Virus record (IMG/VR): IMGVR_UViG_3300020202_000001
Location: 124,001-188,000 of that record
DNA length: 64,000 nucleotides
Direction: 5' to 3' (one strand)
This document shows, one piece after another, positions 18 through 59,609 of this stretch. The notes below the pieces were generated by a model, which saw only the letters and a program-made list of their open reading frames with translations, had not been told where the DNA came from and did no database searches. Every line of letters starts with the position of its first letter. The first letter of the stretch is position 1. Both the position numbers and the translations under genes were made by a program.

Positions 18-776
18 ATGCCCCTGCCCGCACTGGACGCCGTCGACCGCGAGTTCCGCCGCCCACTACACTCGTTCTTCGCGAGGCGGGTGGGCGGCGG
101 CAACGCGGACGACGCGGTGCAAGACACGCTCCTGCAGCTCCACCGGATCGCAGACCGGTACGACCCCGCGGTCCCGCTGAGCAAGTGGGTCTTCGGGGTC
201 GCCAAGAACATCGCGAAGCGGGTCAACCGCTCGCGCGGAAGGCACTACATGGCCAGCATCAACGGAAACGGAAACCCCAACAGCGACAGGACCGGCGTCA
301 TCGACCCGGTCGACGAGAAGGTGCGGTCGCCGCACGACAACACGATCGCCGAGGAGCTGAAGGCGAAGATCCGCGCCGTCATCCACCAGCTGCCCGACGA
401 CATGCAGAACGTGGTGAACCTCCACCTGCTGCAGGGGTTCTCGCAGAAGGAGACGGCGAAGCGGCTGAAGTGGGGCGACACGAAGGTCTACAACACGATG
501 AAGAAGGCCCGGCCGCTGCTCGCCGAGCGGTTCCAGGTCGAGCTGCCCGAGACGTGGCAGGCCCGGGTCCGGGCGGGGGCCAAGGCGCGGCGAGGTCGGG
601 CGGCGGCGACGCCCCCGCCGAGGTCGCACAAGAAGGGCGGCCGCGTCGCGGCCCTGCTCGCGAGCGTGCCGCCACCGCCGCTCCCCGCCGCCGGCCCGCT
701 CCCGGTGCCGACGATGGTGAGCACCCTGAAGGAGATCGCCCACCACGCCGCGGCGCTGGCGAGGCTGTTGGAGTAG
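18..776 (+). CDS. ECF-type sigma70 RNA polymerase sigma factor with basic/Pro-rich C-terminal tail
   Basis: Region 2 motif (LHSFFARRV..ADDAVQDTLLQL..YDP..LSKWVFGVAKN) and region 4 HTH (IHQLPDDMQNVVNLHLLQGFSQKETAKRL..KVYNTMKKAR); RBS GAGGG upstream. Confidence 0.85.
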   Translation: MPLPALDAVDREFRRPLHSFFARRVGGGNADDAVQDTLLQLHRIADRYDPAVPLSKWVFGVAKNIAKRVNRSRGRHYMASINGNGNPNSDRTGVIDPVDEKVRSPHDNTIAEELKAKIRAVIHQLPDDMQNVVNLHLLQGFSQKETAKRLKWGDTKVYNTMKKARPLLAERFQVELPETWQARVRAGAKARRGRAAATPPPRSHKKGGRVAALLASVPPPPLPAAGPLPVPTMVSTLKEIAHHAAALARLLE

Positions 777-780
777 CCGC

Positions 781-1320
781 ATGCCCGACCTCCCCGCCAT
801 CGACAGCTGGGTGCGCGTCCAGACGCCCTACCGGGGCATCTGGGAGGGTCGCGTCACGCGGCACGCACGCGCGCCCGGCTGTTTCTTCTTCATGCCGAAG
901 CGGATCAACAACCAAGACCTACCGGCGGGGCACTACGAGAGCCTGAACGAAGCCAGGGCCTTCGCCGTCGACATCGTCGAGGAGAAGGACCTCCCGTGGC
1001 TCCAGCCGGCCCCGCCGCCGGAGGAGGACGAGCCGGTCCCGCCGATCGAGGTGCCGGAGCCGGCGAGGCTGTGGAACGCCCAGAGCCACACGAAGAGCAC
1101 GCCCAGCCCGAAGCGGAAGGTCGTGCCCCGGCACCCGGTCGTCGTGGACGCCGGCGAGGACCCGCCCAAGCCAGTCGAGGCGGTGATCCCGCCGGAACTC
1201 AAGGCTGAAGAGCCGCCGCCGGCACCGCAGAAGCGGGCGAGGCGTCGGATCGACGACCTGCACGAAGGCCCAACCGATGGCCAAGACGAAACAGGGCCAC
1301 AAGGCCCGTCCAATCCGTAA
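781..1320 (+). CDS. hypothetical protein (beta-rich N-terminus, Pro/Glu-rich tail)
   Basis: Genome-typical codon frame, GGAG RBS, follows sigma gene. Confidence 0.7.
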   Translation: MPDLPAIDSWVRVQTPYRGIWEGRVTRHARAPGCFFFMPKRINNQDLPAGHYESLNEARAFAVDIVEEKDLPWLQPAPPPEEDEPVPPIEVPEPARLWNAQSHTKSTPSPKRKVVPRHPVVVDAGEDPPKPVEAVIPPELKAEEPPPAPQKRARRRIDDLHEGPTDGQDETGPQGPSNP

Positions 1321-3079
1321 ACCCAGCAAGCCCCTCCCGATCCCCAAGGTCAACGCGCTGCGTCAGGCCCTGGCGACGCCGGCGTGGGGCAAGTACCGCA
1401 ACGTGACGTTCCGCGACGTGGTCAAGGTCGACCTGGCGTGGATTCACTGGCTGTACCGCCAGAAGCGGACGCTCGGCGAGATCCGCGACCCGAGCTTCCT
1501 GACGCTCGCGCTGATCTGCAAGCACTACCCGCTCGGCGTCGACGACGAGGCGGAGCGGGAGCTGGCCAAGGGCAAGCTGCTGGCCGAGGAGCCGGGCGAC
1601 GAGTCCCGCGACGAGGACGACGTCGACGAGGGCAGCCTGCCCGGCGAGAACGGCGACGACGACGAGGAGGATGACGACGACTTCGACGAGTCCGAGGACG
1701 ACGACGAAGACGACGACGACGAGGACGACGTGCCGATCACGACGGCCGCCTCGCCGGGCCGCCGCCCGCCCCCGCCGCACGACCCGGTCGCCGAAGCGAT
1801 GCAGGCGAAGATCGCCCTGGTGCAGGGCTGCTTCATGTACGGCGTCGACTCCGACCTCCGCGACGAGCTGGACGTGCTGCGGGAGTTCACCAAGCTCCGG
1901 CTCGTGTTCCTCCGGCCCGGCAACGACCCGCCCGGCGTGGTGCGGGGGACGAAGACGCGGGTGGCCGTGCTCGACATGCCCGGGTACCTGTGCTTCCTGC
2001 CCGACGACATCCGCAGCTTCCTCAAGAGCAAGAAGCGCGGGCTGATGCTCCCGTACCCGTACCCGGTGCAGGCGCTGCGGCGGTATTCCGAGACGGTCAA
2101 GCCGCTGCCCGTCGACGCCCACGTCGTGAAGTGGCCGAGCGTCGAGGACCTGGCGATCGCCGCCCGGGCCTCCGACGAGTCGCTCGACATCCTGGAGACG
2201 CAGCGCGGGGCGTGGCAGGACGGGTACACGGACAGCGACGTGACCGCCATGCTCCGCATCCTGTCCAAGCACTACCCCGACCTCCCGCTCGGGATGGTGT
2301 GGGGCGAGCGGCGGAACGGGATGTGCATGGGCGAGAGCGAGTTGTTCTGCATCGAACCGGACGGCACGCTGAGCCACGCGCCCGACTCGATCTTCGAGTT
2401 CCTCCACCACGCCCCGCAGACCAACGACGCCGTGCTGCCCACCCGGGAGGAGGTCAAGAACTTCTTGGCCGCCCGCCGCGTGACGCAGCACGGCCGGGCG
2501 AAGCCGATCTACGTCGGCGACTACAACTACGTCTGGGTCGACAACGACGCCAGGCAGGAAGAGATCGACCATGGCCAAGGTCCACGCGTGCCCGAAGTGT
2601 GGGTTCCCGTCGCAGCCCTCGCTGGACGTGAGGATGCCGGAGAACCAGGGCAAGACGTACTGCAAACACTGCCTGCAGGTCCCGCCGCCGTCGAAGGCGA
2701 CGCCGATCGACCTGAGCCAGTACACCCTGCAGCCGACGACGTCGAAGTGCGGCCACTGCAGGAGCCCGGTGTTCCTGCTGTGTGCCCGCGAGACGGCACC
2801 GCTGTCGGCGGGGGAGATGCCGATGTTCTACCTGTGCCCGACGTGCGGGAAGATCGTGCGGTCGGGGCAGGTGGAGCCGGTGAGCCCGCCGGAGGTGAAC
2901 CGGTCGCCGGTGGCGGCGGCAGCGGCGACGGTGGAGGACCTGGTGCCGACGACGTCCTCGACTACGACGAGGCGAGGGACGGCGAGAAGTGGGAAGGGTT
3001 CCGCCGGTTCGAGGGCGGCCACGTCCTCGACTCCCGTGGCTACGACCAAGACGGAACCCGCAAGCAATACTGGGACTGA
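1277..3079 (+). CDS. hypothetical protein with N-terminal WGKY..WIHWL (DUF3820/exonuclease X C-terminal-like) motif and acidic tract
   Basis: PAWGKYRNVTFRDVVKVDLAWIHWL resembles the FGKY-G..Y..WL motif; Asp/Glu tract; last 509 nt overlap the next gene. Confidence 0.65.
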   Translation: MAKTKQGHKARPIRKPSKPLPIPKVNALRQALATPAWGKYRNVTFRDVVKVDLAWIHWLYRQKRTLGEIRDPSFLTLALICKHYPLGVDDEAERELAKGKLLAEEPGDESRDEDDVDEGSLPGENGDDDEEDDDDFDESEDDDEDDDDEDDVPITTAASPGRRPPPPHDPVAEAMQAKIALVQGCFMYGVDSDLRDELDVLREFTKLRLVFLRPGNDPPGVVRGTKTRVAVLDMPGYLCFLPDDIRSFLKSKKRGLMLPYPYPVQALRRYSETVKPLPVDAHVVKWPSVEDLAIAARASDESLDILETQRGAWQDGYTDSDVTAMLRILSKHYPDLPLGMVWGERRNGMCMGESELFCIEPDGTLSHAPDSIFEFLHHAPQTNDAVLPTREEVKNFLAARRVTQHGRAKPIYVGDYNYVWVDNDARQEEIDHGQGPRVPEVWVPVAALAGREDAGEPGQDVLQTLPAGPAAVEGDADRPEPVHPAADDVEVRPLQEPGVPAVCPRDGTAVGGGDADVLPVPDVREDRAVGAGGAGEPAGGEPVAGGGGSGDGGGPGADDVLDYDEARDGEKWEGFRRFEGGHVLDSRGYDQDGTRKQYWD

Positions 3080-3281
3080 CCAGTGGTACCAGGTCTCGAT
3101 GACTGCCACCGCGTACGTGCAGGGCAAGGTGGTCGTCGCCGCCAAGGACTCGGCCCAGGCCGAGGAGAAGGCGAAGGCCGAGCCGGGCAACGTCGAGTGG
3201 AAGTACGACGGCCTGCACGACGACGCCGCCCCCAGCGTCGACGACGTCCGCCTCGTCTCCGAGGTCCTGAGTCGACAGTAG
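2571..3281 (+). CDS. zinc-ribbon protein (four CxxC pairs)
   Basis: CPKC, CKHC, CGHC, CPTC; RBS AGGA/GAG before ATG 2571. Confidence 0.7.
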   Translation: MAKVHACPKCGFPSQPSLDVRMPENQGKTYCKHCLQVPPPSKATPIDLSQYTLQPTTSKCGHCRSPVFLLCARETAPLSAGEMPMFYLCPTCGKIVRSGQVEPVSPPEVNRSPVAAAAATVEDLVPTTSSTTTRRGTARSGKGSAGSRAATSSTPVATTKTEPASNTGTDQWYQVSMTATAYVQGKVVVAAKDSAQAEEKAKAEPGNVEWKYDGLHDDAAPSVDDVRLVSEVLSRQ

Positions 3282-3383
3282 AATCGTCCCCCGAACGTGT
3301 GTAAGCTCCCCTTGAATCGTTTCCCTGACCACGGGCGTCGGTGAGTGTCACACCACGCCCCAGTCCGACCAGAAGGAGGCCAC

Positions 3384-5039
3384 ATGGCCCGCAAGTCCGC
3401 TTCGAGCGTCGCTGTCTCCGCCACCACCACGACCGCCCTGCCGCGCGGCACCAAGCCCGCCCTCGCCAGCCGCACCGAGGCCGACGAGCAGTACGACGTG
3501 TTCGAGAACAAGGTCCGCATGGCGGTCGGCAAGCTGACCGGCCCGCTGTTCACCACGGACATCGACCCCGACGTCCTGTGGAACCTGTACCTCGACAACC
3601 TGCCCTCGAACCGCCAGCACTACGTCTGCAACGGGTGCCGCCGGTTCATCCAGCGGTACACCGGGCTCGTCTCGATCGACGAGGCCGGCAACCCGACGCC
3701 CGCCATCTGGGGCCAGATCTCCGCGCCGAAGTTCTTCGCCGAGGCCGTCGACGCGATGTACTGCGCGGTCGGCAAGGCGAAGGTCAACGGCGTGTTCCTC
3801 CCGACCGAGGCCGTCTGGGGCCAGCCGAAGGACGGGCAGTGGACCCACCTGTCCGGCCGCTACACCGGCGAGCTGGCCGTGCAGAAGGGGCTGACGACCC
3901 CGGACCAGCAGATGGCCCAGCTGAAGGAGGACTTCGGCATGATCCAGCGGGCGCTGGCGAACTACTCGGCCGACATCGCCGGCCAGGCGCTGCGGTTCCT
4001 GAAGTCCGACACGCTCGCCCGGTCCGAGAAGGCCCTCGGCGTCGCCCAGTGGTTCGTCGACCTCCACGCCAACGTGGCCGGGGCGACGAAGCGGAACCGC
4101 GACAACGTGATCTGGCTGGCGGCCGCCACGGCCCCGGTCGGGTTCGCCCACGTCAACGCCGGGCTGATCTCCACGCTGCTCGACGATCTGCTGGCGGGCC
4201 TCCCGCACGCGGACATCAAGCGGAAGTGGGCCGAGAAGGTCGACGGGATCAACTACATGCGGCCGAAGGCGGCCCCGAAGGCCGGCACGATCGCCCGGGC
4301 CGAGGCGCTGGTCGAGGAGATGGGCCTCAAGCGGTCGCTCGACCGCCGGTTCGCCACGCTCGACGACGTCCTGAAGAAGGACTGGGAGCCGCGGACGATC
4401 AAGCCCCGCAAGCCGGCCCCGACCGGCGGCGTGTTCGGTCACCTGCAGCCGCCCTCGGCCTCGAAGGCGGTGCACAACCGCGACATCAGCGGCGGGACGA
4501 TGACCTGGGCGAAGTTCGAGCGGACGGTGCTGCCCGAGGCGCTGTCGATCGAGATCTCGTGCCCGGCGAGCGGCAACTACTTCGGCACGACGACCGCCAC
4601 CTACCGCACGGCCCCGCCCCTGCTGCAGTGGGACGGGCTGGACGGCCAGGAGCGGAACCCGGTGTCGATGTACGTCTACCACGGCGGCTCGACGGCCCGG
4701 CAGTGGGGCCTGTCGCCGGGGTGGAACAAGGTGACGGCGATCTTCCGCGGCCCGCAGGCGTGGCAGCGGCCGGACCTGTTCAAGAACCAGGGCACCGGCA
4801 TCCACTTCTCGATCGAGGGCTGCCGCGACTCCCGGAACGCCGGGCTCGCGATCTTCCCCGAGACGCTGCGGTCGGAGCTGCACGAGGTGCGGGCCGTGAT
4901 CGAGGCCCACAGCAAGAGCGGCACGCTCAAGCACCCGGAGAAGGGGACCGCGAACGGCCTGGCGTTCTCGGCCAACACCCAGCTGCGAGTCACCACGGCT
5001 GACGGCCGGGCGACGTACGTGATCGACCGCATGGACTAG
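3384..5039 (+). CDS. conserved phage protein of unknown function
   Basis: Strong RBS AAGGAGG before ATG 3384; LYLDNLP..RQHYVCNGCRRFI..GLVSID motif recognisable from many phage hypothetical proteins. Confidence 0.8.
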   Translation: MARKSASSVAVSATTTTALPRGTKPALASRTEADEQYDVFENKVRMAVGKLTGPLFTTDIDPDVLWNLYLDNLPSNRQHYVCNGCRRFIQRYTGLVSIDEAGNPTPAIWGQISAPKFFAEAVDAMYCAVGKAKVNGVFLPTEAVWGQPKDGQWTHLSGRYTGELAVQKGLTTPDQQMAQLKEDFGMIQRALANYSADIAGQALRFLKSDTLARSEKALGVAQWFVDLHANVAGATKRNRDNVIWLAAATAPVGFAHVNAGLISTLLDDLLAGLPHADIKRKWAEKVDGINYMRPKAAPKAGTIARAEALVEEMGLKRSLDRRFATLDDVLKKDWEPRTIKPRKPAPTGGVFGHLQPPSASKAVHNRDISGGTMTWAKFERTVLPEALSIEISCPASGNYFGTTTATYRTAPPLLQWDGLDGQERNPVSMYVYHGGSTARQWGLSPGWNKVTAIFRGPQAWQRPDLFKNQGTGIHFSIEGCRDSRNAGLAIFPETLRSELHEVRAVIEAHSKSGTLKHPEKGTANGLAFSANTQLRVTTADGRATYVIDRMD

Positions 5040-25286: not shown

Positions 25287-25741
25287 CGCAGGAGACAGGC
25301 ACCACCGAGCAGACGCTCGAAGCCGTGTGCGACGCGATGCTCGTCGACATGGACGGGCTCGCGCGGCAGGCGGCACCGAACGACGCGAAGCGACAGGACG
25401 AGCTGAAGACCGGCGAGAACCTGGGCACGTTCATCAACGTGCTCTTCAACGCCGACAACAGCATCGCGGACGTGCTCCGGCTGATCCTCAAGGCGGCCGA
25501 GGAGCCGTACTGGAAGGTCAACGGGTACTTCCGCGAACCGGACGGCGGGAAGCGGAACCACCTCGGCGAGGTCGCGTTCCGCGCCCCCGACGTCCAGACG
25601 GCCGGCGACCAGGCCTGGGAGCGACTGTGGGAGGCACGACTGACCTCCGCCGGCTGCACCTGGGTCTTCGACGCCGACCAGGTCGACCACCACGAGGCGA
25701 ACAGCCTCGAAGACGACACCGGCACCGTCCGGCGATTGTGA
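25283..25741 (+). CDS. hypothetical protein
   Basis: ATGA coupling. Confidence 0.7.
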   Translation: MTQETGTTEQTLEAVCDAMLVDMDGLARQAAPNDAKRQDELKTGENLGTFINVLFNADNSIADVLRLILKAAEEPYWKVNGYFREPDGGKRNHLGEVAFRAPDVQTAGDQAWERLWEARLTSAGCTWVFDADQVDHHEANSLEDDTGTVRRL

Positions 25742-25748
25742 CAACACC

Positions 25749-27278
25749 ATGAAGCAACACGTCCGAATCACGCAGGCCACGCAAGAGGGGACGATCCAGA
25801 CCGCCGAGGGCGTCCTCGACTTCGCCTCGGGCCAGGTCGCCCTCGACTTCGAGATGGCGGTCAACGCGGGGATGACCTACCGCATCCACCTGAACGACGA
25901 GAAGCCCGCCAAGACCGGCAAGGAGGACCACCTCCGGGCCGCCGTCGAGAACGCCGCCGCGATCAGCGACTACTTCCACTGCCAGAAGGAGCGGTTCCAG
26001 CGGTTCTACGACGAGCACGCCGACGCGCTCTCCGGGTTCCCCGGGATCTGGAAGCTGTGCGGCGACGCCGGCATCGCGCTGGCGATCGCCGAGCGGAAGC
26101 TCAAGATCGAGTGGGGCGAGGACGCCGAGTGGATCGACACGGTCCAGGCGTTCTCGCACCGCGTCATGTACCCGCAGCACGTCGAGGGGCTGCCCGCCCA
26201 CGAGTACCAAGGCGGCAACCACGACGACAAGTTCCTCCTCGCCCTGGCGGTGCGGACGATCGAGGACGCGAAGGCCGGGAAGCTCGACGGGTACTGGGAC
26301 ACCGACGAGGCGAACAAGTCGGGCGACGTCGCCGCCGACCACCCCGAGGAGCTGGACTCGGCCGAGCGGGCCGACCAGCAGCGACAGGTCGAAAAGTTCA
26401 CCCCGGCCGTGAAGCCCGGCCCGGACGACCCGTGCCCGGGCTGCTCGTACTGCGAGGGCTTGGGCGGGGACAAGCACGCGACCGGGCAGGCGGCCGCCCG
26501 GTGCCCCCGCTGTGGCGGCAAGGCCACGCCGGTCGACGTCGGCGCGGCGGTCGTGTTCAACGCCCGCCGACTCGTCCTGCTGATCCTCCGGCGGGCCGAC
26601 GTGCCGAGCACGTACGCGGGGCAGTGGGTGCTGCCGGGCGGCAAGGCGGACACGCTCGAATCCGTCAGCGACGCCGCCGTACGCGAGCTGAAGGAGGAGA
26701 CGGGCGTCGTCGCGTACGCGACCGGGCGGCTGGAGCGTACGACGCTCACGCCGGACGGCCGCCACCGCCGGCACTGGATTACCTGCCACCTCGACCCCGA
26801 CAGCCCGCAGGCGGAGAACAAGGAGCCGGAGAAGCACGAGCGTGTGTACTGGTTCAACCCGACCGCCCTGCCGGAGAACATGTCGGAGGACGACCGGCAG
26901 GCGATCCTCTACCTGACCGGGCCGATTACCCCCGGCCACCCGTACGCCGTCATCAACGCCGAGCCGGTGACGGCCAAGGCGCTCGTCATCACCCTGTTGG
27001 CGACCGTCTCCCTCGACGCGACCGAGGAGGAGCTGGCGAAGCTCACCCCGGACGAGCGGTGGGAGGCGGCGAACTGGGCGATGGCGAGCAGCCTGAGCGC
27101 GAGCGACAACGACGACGTCGTGGTGCCGCCCAAGCCGGCGTGCCTCGACAAGATCAAGGAGTGCCCCCAGCCGTGGGATCAACCAACACCGAGCAGCTCC
27201 GCAGCGCCTCCCGCATCAACACCGGACGGGTCACCAAGCCCGCCACCGTCGACGTCCCCGGACCCGTCGAACAGCTGA
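25749..27278 (+). CDS. multidomain protein with zinc ribbon and Nudix hydrolase domain
   Basis: Nudix box GQWVLPGGKADTLESVSDAAVRELKEETG; NKEPEKH..VYWF; CPGC..CPRC. Confidence 0.85.
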   Translation: MKQHVRITQATQEGTIQTAEGVLDFASGQVALDFEMAVNAGMTYRIHLNDEKPAKTGKEDHLRAAVENAAAISDYFHCQKERFQRFYDEHADALSGFPGIWKLCGDAGIALAIAERKLKIEWGEDAEWIDTVQAFSHRVMYPQHVEGLPAHEYQGGNHDDKFLLALAVRTIEDAKAGKLDGYWDTDEANKSGDVAADHPEELDSAERADQQRQVEKFTPAVKPGPDDPCPGCSYCEGLGGDKHATGQAAARCPRCGGKATPVDVGAAVVFNARRLVLLILRRADVPSTYAGQWVLPGGKADTLESVSDAAVRELKEETGVVAYATGRLERTTLTPDGRHRRHWITCHLDPDSPQAENKEPEKHERVYWFNPTALPENMSEDDRQAILYLTGPITPGHPYAVINAEPVTAKALVITLLATVSLDATEEELAKLTPDERWEAANWAMASSLSASDNDDVVVPPKPACLDKIKECPQPWDQPTPSSSAAPPASTPDGSPSPPPSTSPDPSNS

Positions 27279-31450: not shown

Positions 31451-32434
31451 GTGGTCCCCGACCTGCATCGCTACGACTGGGTGATCGTGAACTCTAGCGC
31501 CGGAAAGGATTCTCAGGCGTCCCTCTCGAAAGTCATCAAGACGGCCAAGGCCCAGAACTACCCGCTCGACCGCATCGTCGTCGCCCACGCGGACCTGGGC
31601 GAGATGGAGTGGCCGGGCACGCTGGACTTGGCCAAGGAGCACGCGGCCCACTACGGGCTGCGGTTCGAGGTCGAGCGTCGCCCGCAGGGGGATCTGCTGC
31701 AGCAGGTTGAGGAGCGGGGCATGTGGCCCGACTCCAAGAACCGGTTCTGCACCTCCGACCACAAGCGGGGGCAGATCGCCCGCTTGTTCACCAAACTGAC
31801 CAAGGAGACCCGTGACGCGCTGGCAACTGCTGGCTCTGGGGTTCGGGATCAACCTCGCCCTGTTCGTGATCGCGTACGTGCTGATCGGCACCCACGCCAC
31901 GTCGGATTCGACGAGGCGGACGTGGATTGGGGCGGTCATCGCGGTCGAGGCGGCCGTGTACTTCGCGTTCGTCCGGCACGTCCTGCGAAGCGGTCGCTGA
32001 AGAAGGTACGCTTCCTGAGCGTGTTCGGCTTCCGCTCCGAGGAGAGCCCGGCCCGGAAGAAGATGGTCGAGTTCGAGATCGACGAGCGGCTGACGAACAC
32101 GCTCAGGCACGTCGACCGGTGGCTGCCCGTGCACCACTGGTCGACCCGGGACGTGTGGCACGAGATCCACCAGTCGGGCATGCGGTCGCACTGGGCCTAC
32201 CAGCGCGGCATGAGCCGGCTGTCCTGCCGGTTCTGCATCTTCGCCCCCAAGTCGCAGCTGATGATCTCCGCGCAGCAGCCGGAGAATCGAGAGGTGTTCG
32301 AGAGGTACGTGCAGCTTGAGATCAAAATCGGTCACCGCTTCAAGGCCAAGGAGTCCCTCCAAGACATCAAGGCGGCGGTCGAAGCCGGCGAGCAAGTCGC
32401 CCCCGGCTCCGACGACGGCTGCTGGAACATGTAA
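31451..32434 (+). CDS. PAPS reductase/CysH-like (PP-loop) protein with a ~63-aa internal insertion
   Basis: NSSAGKDS PP-loop, HADLG.MEW, RFCTSDHKR, GFRSEESPAR, WLPVHHWS, AY..GMSRLSCRFC; AGGAGG RBS before GTG 31451. Confidence 0.88.
   Translation: MVPDLHRYDWVIVNSSAGKDSQASLSKVIKTAKAQNYPLDRIVVAHADLGEMEWPGTLDLAKEHAAHYGLRFEVERRPQGDLLQQVEERGMWPDSKNRFCTSDHKRGQIARLFTKLTKETRDALATAGSGVRDQPRPVRDRVRADRHPRHVGFDEADVDWGGHRGRGGRVLRVRPARPAKRSLKKVRFLSVFGFRSEESPARKKMVEFEIDERLTNTLRHVDRWLPVHHWSTRDVWHEIHQSGMRSHWAYQRGMSRLSCRFCIFAPKSQLMISAQQPENREVFERYVQLEIKIGHRFKAKESLQDIKAAVEAGEQVAPGSDDGCWNM
31812..32000 (+). CDS. small two-TM membrane protein fully nested (+1 frame) in the PAPS-reductase gene
   Basis: AAGGAG RBS 4 nt before GTG; genome-typical codons in this frame; two TM helices and basic tail; host frame is Arg/Gly-rich over exactly this span. 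Confidence 0.7.
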   Translation: MTRWQLLALGFGINLALFVIAYVLIGTHATSDSTRRTWIGAVIAVEAAVYFAFVRHVLRSGR

Positions 32435-58355: not shown

Positions 58356-58368
58356 AGGAGTTCACGCA

Positions 58369-58956
58369 ATGGCCAAGGCAGCACAGATCGCGCAGTCCCG
58401 CAGGGCGGCCCCGGCGGCCCCCGCAGCGGCCCCGCAGAGGGCCGCCAGGCCCCCGAAGGCACCCGCACCGCCCCCGAGCCCCACGCAGCTGCTCGCGGAC
58501 GCGTACGACGCCCTGCGGCTCTGCGAGGACGGCATGGCGGCGTACTCGACGCTGCAGAACATGATGGCCGGCGACAAGCCGGGGGCGCAAACGGGCGTCC
58601 CGGCCCCCCGGTTCGCTTGGGAGGCCGCCCCTCCGGGCGGGACGCCCCGGCAGATCGTGTCCAACCTCGCCAAGCTGCCGCCGGAGGACCGCCCGGCCGT
58701 GCTCGGGCCGCTCGTCAACCTCCACTTCGACCAGATGCTGGCCGGAGCGGAGAAGGCGAAGGCCATGGTCGACCGGCTGGTGGCGATCCTGACCGCCAGC
58801 GCTCAGGCGGCGGCCCCGGCCGACGAGGAGGCGGGCGACGACCAGCCCGAGGACGACCAGCCCGTCGAGGACGGCGACGACATGGAGGCCGCCGACGAGG
58901 ACCAGGACGACCAGGACGACGACGAAGAGACCGACGACGACCAGCAAGGCGGATGA
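58369..58956 (+). CDS. hypothetical protein with acidic tail
   Basis: AAGGAG RBS. Confidence 0.7.
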   Translation: MAKAAQIAQSRRAAPAAPAAAPQRAARPPKAPAPPPSPTQLLADAYDALRLCEDGMAAYSTLQNMMAGDKPGAQTGVPAPRFAWEAAPPGGTPRQIVSNLAKLPPEDRPAVLGPLVNLHFDQMLAGAEKAKAMVDRLVAILTASAQAAAPADEEAGDDQPEDDQPVEDGDDMEAADEDQDDQDDDEETDDDQQGG

Positions 58957-59609
58957 CCATGAGCTTCGTGCGAAAAGAGGACGTGGAGGCGATCGTCGCG
59001 GAGGCCGACCCGCACGACGGCTTCCGGGTGAAGGACGTGGTGGTAGGGGGCGAGCACTCCCTCCACCTCGTCTTTCGCCGGGGCGGCGTGCCGGTGGCCC
59101 CGCCGTGGCGGATCGGCGGCGGCATGAGCAAGCAGGTGTGGGCGCGAAAGGACCCCACGCCCGAGCAGATTGGCGAGAAGCGCCGGCTCATCATGCTGCT
59201 CGAAGCGGTCTGCCGCTTCATGAACACCTGCGGCGACTGGAACCAACTGGAGGACGTGCTGAGCGGGTTCAGCACGATGATCGGCGGCGACCTGCAGCTC
59301 GCGCTGTGCGGGTCGTTCCAGCTGATCGACTCGTGCGTGACCACCGAGGGCATGTACGAGCACGTCTTCTACTCGCCCGAGAGCCCGTGGGCGATCCGGT
59401 GGGCCGACGAGCAGTTCTTCGACGTCGTCTCGCTGAACGAGATCAACCGGGAGCTACAAGAACAGGAAGCGAGCGAACCAGATGTCCTCCCCGGAGGAAC
59501 CGATCAAGGGTTCGGAGAGGACCTACCCCGTCAACCAGATCATCGACAACTGGAAGCGGTGGAGGGCGACGCTGGCGAAGACGTACCTGGACCAGACCCC
59601 GAGGGGTGA
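58953..59609 (+). CDS. hypothetical protein
   Basis: ATGA coupling; 128-nt overlap with the next gene. Confidence 0.65.
   Translation: MTMSFVRKEDVEAIVAEADPHDGFRVKDVVVGGEHSLHLVFRRGGVPVAPPWRIGGGMSKQVWARKDPTPEQIGEKRRLIMLLEAVCRFMNTCGDWNQLEDVLSGFSTMIGGDLQLALCGSFQLIDSCVTTEGMYEHVFYSPESPWAIRWADEQFFDVVSLNEINRELQEQEASEPDVLPGGTDQGFGEDLPRQPDHRQLEAVEGDAGEDVPGPDPEG

What the first reader, a model, noticed from the sequence alone, without database searches (positions are those of the whole stretch)
2571..3281. Two interlocked genes alternate as the dominant frame over 509 nt
Seen: ORF A (1277-3079) and ORF B (2571-3281) overlap. From 2571 to about 2940, B reads as a real zinc-ribbon domain and A as filler. 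From about 2945 to 3079, A reads as ordered sequence (DDVLDYDEARDGEKWEGFRRFEGGHVLDSRGYD..YWD) while B becomes a Ser/Thr linker. B then resumes with a folded-looking domain. A's final segment has no start codon of its own. Inference: a domain-linker-domain mosaic in which each gene uses the other's domain as its linker, or a programmed frameshift joining B1 to A2.
Basis: partly seen in the sequence, partly recalled or inferred. Interest (0 to 1): 0.6.

Follow-up and report, generated by a model that had tools for sequence, protein, structure and literature searches.

The report
Interlocked overlapping genes in a phage
In a 224-kb GC-rich soil phage, one gene has no stop codon at its natural end and is read 509 bases into the next gene; codon statistics indicate both readings are made, with each protein's loosely constrained stretch lying over the other's constrained stretch, and neither sequencing error nor a ribosomal frameshift signal is involved.

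Summary
ORF A (1277-3079) and ORF B (2571-3281) overlap by 509 nt, and the coding signature switches A→B at about 2570, B→A at 2945 and A→B at 3078. In 2945-3076 frame A outscores frame B by 1.08 log units per codon; none of 4043 control windows exceeds 0.30.

Two independent assemblies (word depth 358 and 101) reproduce the sequence with no difference, so indel error is very unlikely.

The only close relative (L003, about 50% protein identity) has the same layout. There B is one ORF (zinc ribbon, linker, small C-terminal domain), and A again runs past B's start.

A's "filler" is not neutral. In the window, L003 and a distant relative (L014), third-position choices in the overlapped gene make A's tail acidic and poor in Arg (window z 5.7, beyond all 346 genome controls). 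The tail is therefore very probably translated.

No slippery site, homopolymer or unusual RNA structure supports programmed frameshifting.

The origin of the 44-codon A2 segment is unresolved. It behaves as a 129-nt cassette that is in frame for both ORFs. A compensated frameshift pair in B remains the main rival.

Verdict: a real interlocked overlapping gene pair, a new variant of a known kind.

The parts
1277..3079 (+). ORF A, 600 aa, including its TGA stop (3077-3079)
   Evidence: It is the only product called here in the public protein set (P0001).
1277..2569 (+). A1: conserved body of A (431 aa), with an N-terminal ExoX-like_C motif, an Asp/Glu-rich stretch and a C-terminal part ending in the motif YNYVW
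   Evidence: 59% identical to P0002 of L003 over its whole length. Frame-A codon score is -3.37. The Pfam ExoX-like_C hit is below cut-off here but above it in relative P0004.
2570..2944 (+). A's run-on tail (125 aa, rich in Gly/Pro/Ala/Val/Asp/Glu), read in the -1 frame of B's zinc ribbons
   Evidence: Off-frame codon score. Net acidic minus basic is +15, against -3.7 +/- 3.2 expected from B's protein and genome codon usage. This is beyond all 346 genome control windows. The third-position bias depends on context.
2945..3076 (+). A2: last 44 codons of A, with native frame-A codon usage and no start codon of its own
   Evidence: No homologue was found.
2948..3076 (+). 129-nt (43-codon) stretch whose removal leaves both ORFs intact (cassette-like behaviour)
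   Evidence: without it, A ends ...GGGPGA-stop and B reads ...EDLVP-DQWYQVS.
2571..3281 (+). ORF B, 236 aa, including its TAG stop
   Evidence: It aligns with the single 197-aa ORF L003:7917-8510 across both ends (E 4e-46). It is not called as a gene in the public protein set.
2556..2563 (+). Shine-Dalgarno-like AGGAAGAG, 7 nt before B's ATG
   Evidence: Read from the sequence. The frame-B coding signature starts at the ATG.
2571..2705 (+). B residues 1-45: first CxxC...CxxC zinc ribbon, absent from L003
   Evidence: Pfam zinc-ribbon hits are all below cut-off.
2706..2894 (+). B residues 46-108: second zinc ribbon, conserved in L003 (62-80% identical in blocks)
   Evidence: There is a weak PHROG hit to a Lar-like zinc-ribbon family (E 2.7e-4).
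2895..3077 (+). B linker (residues 109-169, rich in Thr/Ala/Ser/Arg/Gly). Its distal 44 codons lie over A2 and use rare codons.
   Evidence: Frame-B score of -4.69 is in the lowest 0.07% of true-frame windows. AlphaFold pLDDT is 22-28 over most of residues 101-150, in a model of low overall confidence. Any codon choice for A2 gives about 20 Ser/Thr of 44 and no stop (P 0.98) in frame B.
3078..3278 (+). B2: small C-terminal domain of B (predicted strand-strand-helix-strand)
   Evidence: 48% identical to L003 B's C-terminus. Homology starts upstream of the ATG at 3099, which is Leu (TTA) in L003. Third-position usage matches the genome average, so there is no frame-A tuning here. Best local pLDDT is 59-74.
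3276..3308 (+). Conserved non-coding block after B's stop (context only, not part of the overlap)
   Evidence: 31 of 33 bases identical in L003, and unique in the genome.

Best explanation
A and B are two real same-strand overlapping genes of a 224-kb GC-rich phage, and both ORFs are translated in full. Gene A has no stop at the end of its conserved body. Ribosomes therefore read on in the -1 frame of B, first through 125 codons over B's two zinc ribbons, then through 44 codons (A2) over B's linker, and stop at TGA 3077, exactly where B's C-terminal domain begins.

Over the zinc ribbons, B's amino acids dominate. Selection on A acts only through B's synonymous sites and keeps A's tail acidic and poor in Arg. 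Over A2, frame A dominates, and B's reading is an automatic, stop-free, Ser/Thr-rich hydrophilic linker between its zinc ribbons and its C-terminal domain.

Shown: the frame alternation, the accuracy of the sequence, the shared layout in L003, and the codon tuning.

Inferred: that translation actually occurs and that A's tail matters to the phage.

Open: how A2 arose. It may have evolved in place, or it may be a 129-nt cassette that is in frame for both ORFs. Whether it folds or binds anything is also open.
For: Frame alternation.

Sequence accuracy.

Relative L003: A (P0002, 501 aa) runs 254 nt past B's ATG, and B is one 197-aa ORF holding both a B1-like and a B2-like part. L003's A stop also falls where frame-B signal becomes strong again. 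Its last 24 A codons score better in frame A than in frame B (D +0.2; only 0.35% of control windows reach 0).

Tuning of A's tail: window +15 against -3.7 +/- 3.2; L003 +14 against 1.5 +/- 3.4; L014 +12 against 4.7 +/- 3.3. The window z of 5.7 exceeds all 346 genome controls (maximum 4.94), and that maximum lies under another run-on ORF.

Context of the bias: G rather than C at the overlapped gene's third position before A (p 0.0012, <0.0001, 0.0014) and before G (3.7e-6, 0.063, 0.0026). There is no such bias before C (0.5, 0.89, 0.35). This is what choosing Asp/Glu over His/Gln and Gly over Arg predicts, with Ala versus Pro neutral. B2, which A does not overlap, shows no bias.

A's stop sits at the exact end of the frame-A signal. 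Removing 2948-3076 keeps both ORFs open, with the same stop.

If A's tail is translated over the zinc ribbons, it must also be translated through A2, because there is no stop in between.
Against: There is no protein or RNA evidence; no RNA run holds the locus.

A2 has no detectable homologue in L003 in any frame, in phages, in the same genome or in the ESM Atlas. Its conservation is therefore untested.

The openness of frame A over B is not surprising on its own: chance 0.65 in the window, 0.079 in L003, 0.12 in L014, which I combined by hand with Fisher's method to about 0.12.

Site-level synonymous conservation in the overlap shows only a trend (codon identity 0.71 against 0.61, p 0.11).

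There is no evidence that A2's codons are tuned for B (p 0.07-0.2).

Structure models are of low confidence (pLDDT 47 and 45).

The tuning could reflect avoidance of a harmful basic tail rather than a positive function.
Confidence: 0.6

Rival explanations
1. A2 is a fossil. B once read 2945-3076 in its own frame as a structured middle part. A pair of compensating indels, one base lost near 2948 and one gained at 3077, then moved that stretch into frame A. B now carries a scrambled linker, and A reads the old B sequence only by accident.
For: The pattern is the textbook one for compensating frameshifts: flanks in one frame, a 43-44 codon middle whose native frame differs, sharp switch points and no start codon. 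L003 B has a native frame-B middle part of similar length. Such pairs are documented (PMC8935012, PMC8127213). The frame-B reading of A2 is almost always stop-free and hydrophilic, so it would be tolerated.
Against: A2 shows no similarity to L003's middle part (p 0.86). Before the indels, A would have read the third frame here and then the -1 frame of B2, about 120 Arg-rich untuned codons as far as 3304. That conflicts with the strong tuning of the tail upstream, unless the lost base happened to belong to A's old stop. The gained base would also have had to create A's present stop. No indel variant appears in two assemblies.
Confidence: 0.2
2. A's extension past about 2570 is not translated or not relevant. 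It would be a chance open frame of the kind GC-rich DNA gives, with A ended by some unknown means, and the third-position bias would have another cause.
For: Chance openness over B1 is 0.65 in this genome. Long off-frame ORFs are everywhere in the window. There is no expression data.
Against: Frame A has no stop, and nothing else that would end translation of A was seen between 2570 and 3077. The bias is confined to the overlapped part, depends on context in the way amino-acid selection predicts, recurs in three genomes over two unrelated downstream genes, and is the genome-wide extreme.
Confidence: 0.1
3. Programmed -1 ribosomal frameshift from B1 into A2, giving a zinc-ribbon-A2 protein, possibly with a +1 shift or re-initiation into B2.
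For: A2 has no start codon. Its stop is followed by C, a context I recall as weak for termination (own knowledge). An ATG lies 20 nt downstream.
Against: There is no X XXY YYZ heptamer in frame B between 2880 and 2975 and no homopolymer of 4 or more between 2900 and 3100. RNA folds downstream of the switch points are no stronger than shuffles (z -1.1, +1.0). There is no Rfam match. GAC cannot re-pair in the +1 frame. L003 reads B in one frame throughout, and its residue at the 3099 ATG is Leu TTA.
Confidence: 0.03
4. Assembly or sequencing indel errors split ordinary tandem genes.
For: The record is a metagenome contig.
Against: Two separate Logan assemblies at word depth 358 and 101 match with 0 differences and 0 gaps. 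The run-on of A over B recurs in L003 and L014, which come from other samples.
Confidence: 0.02

Closest known systems
Unidirectional overlapping genes formed by 3' elongation of the upstream gene after loss of its stop codon (Fonseca, Harris and Posada 2013, PMC3887535)
   Same: The upstream ORF lacks a stop at its natural end and runs to the next in-frame stop inside the neighbour. GC-rich DNA gives long run-ons. The distant relative L015 still has the ordinary ATGA junction.
   Different: That paper reports that long overlaps are selected against in GC-rich genomes. Here the overlap is 509 nt, recurs in relatives, the overlapped gene is tuned for the tail, and the dominant frame changes twice within one overlap.
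Overprinted (dual-coding) genes of viruses (review: Pavesi 2021, PMC8227390). From my own knowledge: phiX174 nested genes, lambda Rz/Rz1, and the tendency of overlap-encoded regions to be disordered.
   Same: Two proteins come from one stretch in two frames. The frame with genome-like codon usage is taken as the older one. The other frame encodes low-complexity, probably disordered sequence.
   Different: The older or dominant frame is B over 2571-2944 and A over 2945-3076, so the roles swap inside one gene pair. I know of no described pair with this reciprocal tiling, but I did not search the literature exhaustively.
[quoted passage not shown]
   Same: A short stretch whose native frame differs from both flanks, with the flanks in register.
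   Different: The defining evidence, a relative with the stretch in frame, is missing. The out-of-frame stretch ends exactly at the other gene's stop and is read natively by that gene.
Programmed ribosomal frameshifting, such as phage tail-chaperone G/GT and dnaX (review PMC5009743; details from own knowledge)
   Same: A segment with coding signature in another frame and without its own start.
   Different: No slippery site, no stimulatory structure, and no conservation in the relative.

Membership tests
Same-strand overlapping gene pair by stop-codon loss / 3' elongation | Two same-strand ORFs share nucleotides, and the upstream one has no stop near the downstream start | tested here: met
   A 1277-3079 and B 2571-3281. 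There is no frame-A stop within 45 nt of B's ATG or before 3077.
Same-strand overlapping gene pair by stop-codon loss / 3' elongation | Relatives with the non-overlapping (ancestral) junction | tested here: inconclusive
   L015 has an A-like gene ending in a normal ATGA overlap with a 138-aa CxxC protein. However, that protein matches B only weakly (E 0.054), and the A-like gene is a distant relative.
Same-strand overlapping gene pair by stop-codon loss / 3' elongation | Both products are made | not testable with these tools
   No RNA run holds the locus, and the host is unknown.
Dual-coding region under selection in both frames | Constraint in frame B over 2571-2944 | tested here: met
   Native codon usage. 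62-80% amino-acid identity to L003 in frame B against 53-56% in frame A.
Dual-coding region under selection in both frames | Constraint in frame A over 2571-2944 | tested here: met
   Compositional tuning with z 5.7, beyond 346 controls. It is context-specific and repeated in L003 and L014.
Dual-coding region under selection in both frames | Reduced synonymous change at individual sites in the overlap | tested here: inconclusive
   Codon identity at conserved residues is 0.71 against 0.61 in controls, p 0.11, with one relative only.
Programmed -1 ribosomal frameshift | Slippery heptamer at the frame change | tested here: not met
   None in 2880-2975, and no homopolymer of 4 or more.
Programmed -1 ribosomal frameshift | Stimulatory RNA structure downstream | tested here: not met
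   z -1.1 for 2950-3030; 23 of 200 shuffles fold as well.
Programmed -1 ribosomal frameshift | Shift conserved in relatives | tested here: not met
   L003 B is a single frame.
Compensatory frameshift pair | A middle stretch native to another frame, with flanks in register | tested here: met
   Switch points 2945 and 3078; +54 log units.
Compensatory frameshift pair | A relative carries the homologous stretch in frame | tested here: not met
   No similarity between A2 and L003's middle part in any frame pair. The test is weak because this region may evolve fast.
Assembly indel artefact | Reads or independent assemblies disagree with the contig | tested here: not met
   0 differences and 0 gaps in two assemblies.
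Zinc-ribbon protein (B) | Paired CxxC motifs and a family match | tested here: inconclusive
   Four CxxC motifs read from the sequence. All Pfam zinc-ribbon hits are below cut-off. PHROG Lar-like hit has E 2.7e-4.

The most novel reading that the evidence does not exclude
The A family of phage proteins carries a functional acidic C-terminal tail that is always encoded by overprinting whatever gene lies downstream: a zinc-ribbon gene here and in L003, an unrelated 111-aa gene in L014. More widely, this 224-kb phage leaves out the stop codon at roughly 7% of its gene junctions and tunes the overlapped genes so that the run-on tails are acidic. In the window the arrangement has gone one step further. 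A true C-terminal module of A (A2) sits over B's linker, so the two genes tile each other reciprocally.
Probability: 0.3. Interest if true: 0.7.

Novelty: new variant of a known kind. Interest (0 to 1): 0.55.

Why it matters
Gene finders forbid long overlaps. Here the public protein set holds the 600-aa A and a 60-aa fragment of B, and it misses the zinc-ribbon protein altogether.

The locus shows that in very GC-rich phages a missing stop can give a long, translated and selected tail over the next gene. It also shows that synonymous-site context statistics can reveal this from sequence alone.

The reciprocal tiling fits the idea that overlaps are tolerated where one partner is disordered: one gene's constrained part lies over the other's loosely constrained part, and then the roles swap. 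If A2 proves functional, it would be a natural example of two proteins sharing DNA by interleaving domains and linkers. That is useful for understanding de novo sequence birth and for designing overlapping genes.

Tried and rejected
Relatives:
- Searches found nothing in phage records.
- IMG/VR gave nothing with A1, B or their alignments.
- The metagenome contig scan found only the source contig.
- Species genomes gave nothing.
- The word search with the B alignment and the B2 alignment returned only self and L003.
- The exhaustive HMMER search with the A1 profile gave two full-length members only.
- Loci fetched through the neighbouring DUF8224-like gene carry no A or B relative.

Similarity I saw by eye between the ends of the two A tails (an EGFR word) is not significant (p 0.67), so I dropped it.

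Selection for an open frame A over B is rejected as an argument: combined p is about 0.12.

Tuning of A2's codons for B's linker is not significant.

Function leads: Pfam and PHROG scans of A2, B2 and the relatives' neighbours gave nothing above cut-off. The ESM Atlas gave no usable hit.

AlphaFold models of B and of L003 B are of low confidence, so I made no fold search.

I did not fold or search a joined B1+A2+B2 reading, because the tools take only sequences the DNA gives letter for letter. That step is left out.

No other genetic code was invoked; aragorn finds no suppressor tRNA.
Full report
**Setting.** The window is bases 124001-188000 of a 224,418-bp virus record with direct terminal repeats, rated complete. 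It comes from a soil metagenome contig and has 69% G+C. Almost all genes lie on the + strand. Third codon positions are about 97% G or C, so off-frame stop codons are rare and long meaningless ORFs are common. Any claim about overlapping ORFs here must therefore rest on more than the ORFs being open.

**The observation.** ORF A (1277-3079, 600 aa) and ORF B (2571-3281, 236 aa) are as described.

- The third-position G+C plot and codon-usage likelihoods built from 143 genes of the same genome both show the coding signature in frame A up to about 2565.
- It lies in frame B over 2571-2940, in frame A over 2945-3076, and in frame B again from 3078.
- For 2945-3076, frame A scores -3.61 per codon, typical of real genes. 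Frame B scores -4.69, typical of an off-frame.
- Among 4043 windows of 44 codons in real genes, the -1 frame never beats the true frame by more than 0.30; here it does so by 1.08.
- A change-point scan puts the switches at 2945 (2942-2960) and 3078, and gains 54 log units over reading B throughout.
- Frame A has no start codon, canonical or near-cognate, between 2843 and 3076.

**Not an artefact.** Two Logan assemblies of two sequencing runs, at word depth 358 and 101, reproduce 1736-3500 without a single difference or gap. These are contigs, possibly from the source samples, so rare alleles would not show. A consensus indel error at that depth is nonetheless very unlikely. The layout also recurs in other samples, as described next.

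**Relatives.** The family is very rare.

- The word search and an exhaustive HMMER search of 1.8 billion representatives found one full-length relative of A. This is P0002, 501 aa, on a 15.8-kb contig (L003, 60% G+C). Two distant relatives also turned up: P0003 on L014 and P0005 on L015.
- In L003, A again has no stop at the end of its conserved body and runs 254 nt past the ATG of the next gene.
- That next gene is a single 197-aa ORF. It aligns with the window's B at both ends: the second zinc ribbon and the C-terminal domain (E 4e-46).
- Frame-B signal is continuous in L003. The homology of the C-terminal domain starts upstream of the window's ATG at 3099, which is Leu (TTA) in L003.
- B1 and B2 therefore belong to one protein, and B2 is not a separate gene, although a public gene call treats it as one (P0019).
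- In L014 the A-like ORF runs 330 nt over an unrelated 111-aa gene, in the same frame relation.
- In L015 the A-like gene ends with an ordinary ATGA overlap, followed by a 138-aa CxxC protein and a 60-aa gene.

**Is A's run-on meaningful?** Openness alone is not. Resampling B's synonymous codons gives an open frame A with probability 0.65 in the window, 0.079 in L003 and 0.12 in L014. Combined by hand with Fisher's method, p is about 0.12.

The composition of the tail, however, is far from neutral.

- Given B's protein and the genome's codon usage, the frame-A reading over B1 should be slightly basic (acidic minus basic -3.7 +/- 3.2). It is +15.
- In 346 control windows the same z-score has mean -0.5 and maximum 4.94; here it is 5.7. 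The -1 frames of ordinary genes average -15 and never exceed +9.
- The control maximum lies under another run-on ORF of this genome.
- The same excess is seen in L003 (+14 against 1.5 +/- 3.4) and in L014 (+12 against 4.7 +/- 3.3).
- Its mechanism is visible at B's third positions. G is preferred to C when the next codon starts with A (giving Asp/Glu, not His/Gln, in frame A), with G (Gly, not Arg) and, more weakly, with T (Val, not Leu). There is no preference when it starts with C (Ala or Pro). This holds in all three genomes.
- B2, which A does not reach, shows genome-average usage, and its -1 frame is Arg-rich.

I take this as good evidence that A's tail is translated and selected for composition. 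Site-by-site synonymous conservation shows only a trend (p 0.11). This fits a disordered acidic tail rather than a folded one.

**The A2 segment.** If ribosomes read A's tail over B1, they must go on through A2 to TGA 3077, and ribosomes that start at B's ATG must read the linker in frame B. Both readings are therefore made today, whatever the history.

- A2 is Asp-rich and carries seven aromatic residues.
- Its frame-B reading is Thr/Ser/Arg/Gly-rich. Resampling A2's codons shows that almost any codon choice would give a stop-free (P 0.98), hydrophilic reading with about 20 Ser/Thr. B's linker is thus an automatic by-product.
- A's stop lies exactly at the end of the frame-A signal and one base before B2 begins.
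- In L003, A's stop likewise falls where frame-B signal recovers. The last 24 codons of L003's A score better in frame A than in frame B, which only 0.35% of control windows do. This is a hint that the tiling is old.
- Removing 2948-3076 (129 nt) leaves both ORFs intact with the same stop. A2 therefore behaves like a cassette that is in frame for both genes.

**Rivals.**

- The main rival is a pair of compensating frameshifts in B that left an ex-B segment in frame A. It fits the sharp switch points. Against it, A2 has no similarity to L003's middle part. It also needs A's earlier stop to have been destroyed by the first indel and A's present stop to have been created by the second. Otherwise A would formerly have carried about 120 untuned Arg-rich codons.
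- Programmed frameshifting lacks every defining feature.
- Structure models of B and L003 B are of low confidence. They agree on zinc ribbon(s), a long low-confidence linker, and a small C-terminal domain of strands and one helix.

**Function.** Little can be said. A1 starts with an ExoX-like_C motif and has an internal Asp/Glu run. B resembles small zinc-ribbon proteins. A phage ECF-type sigma factor lies just upstream.

**Comparison with known systems.** The run-on matches the known route to unidirectional overlaps by stop loss (PMC3887535). The division of labour matches what is known of overprinted viral genes (PMC8227390). What is unusual is the double swap of the dominant frame within one pair, the recurrence of an overprinted acidic tail over unrelated downstream genes, and the number of stop-less junctions in this genome (19 on the + strand). 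I rate it a new variant of a known kind.

**Limits.** There is one close relative only, no expression data and an unknown host. The frame scan of the whole genome is my own crude model, not a curated annotation.

Noticed in passing
window 14612, 27179, 31808, 59453; genome positions 12429, 110640, 118089, 223875 and others (outside the window): A frame-labelled scan finds 19 + strand junctions where the upstream ORF has no stop near the next gene's start and runs on 60-1110 nt. Several tails are more acidic than codon resampling predicts (z 7.0, 4.4, 4.1, 3.5, 3.2, 2.8). Examples in the window: ORF 25644-27278, an ORF ending at 32434 (623-nt run-on), and ORF 58356-59609.
   Followed up: partly
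window 14612: A second frame change for which no start codon was seen in the new frame (open for 367 nt upstream). The new frame reads as Ser/Thr/Gly/Pro-rich sequence, so it may be an artefact of my scan or another frame-switch locus.
   Followed up: no
window 3276-3308; L003 8505-8537: A 33-nt block (B's stop plus 27 nt, containing GAACGTGTGTAAGCT) is 31/33 identical between phages whose proteins are only 50-60% identical. It is unique in the genome. It is probably a regulatory element ahead of the DUF8224/phrog_1735 gene (3384-5039).
   Followed up: partly
window 2571-2705: The window's B has an extra N-terminal zinc ribbon (43 codons) that L003 lacks. The length difference is a multiple of three, so ORF A stays open across it.
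   Followed up: partly
L014 4815-4835: The junction between the A-like ORF and the overlapped 111-aa gene reads AAGGAGAAAAAAGATG: a strong ribosome-binding site followed by a run of six A. That run could also allow slippage from A's frame into the next gene's.
   Followed up: no
window 18-776: Phage-encoded ECF-type sigma factor (Sigma70_r2 and r4_2; PHROG sigma factor, E 5e-19), two genes upstream of A.
   Followed up: no
window 1577-1730: A's internal Asp/Glu run is a low-complexity repeat. The reads tool skipped it as a repeat (1644-1735), so that stretch of A is not verified by the assemblies.
   Followed up: no
window 2571-3281: Public gene calls for this genome hold the 600-aa A and a 60-aa B2 fragment (3099-3281) but no zinc-ribbon protein. 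In L003, likewise, only an 89-aa C-terminal piece of B is called.
   Followed up: yes
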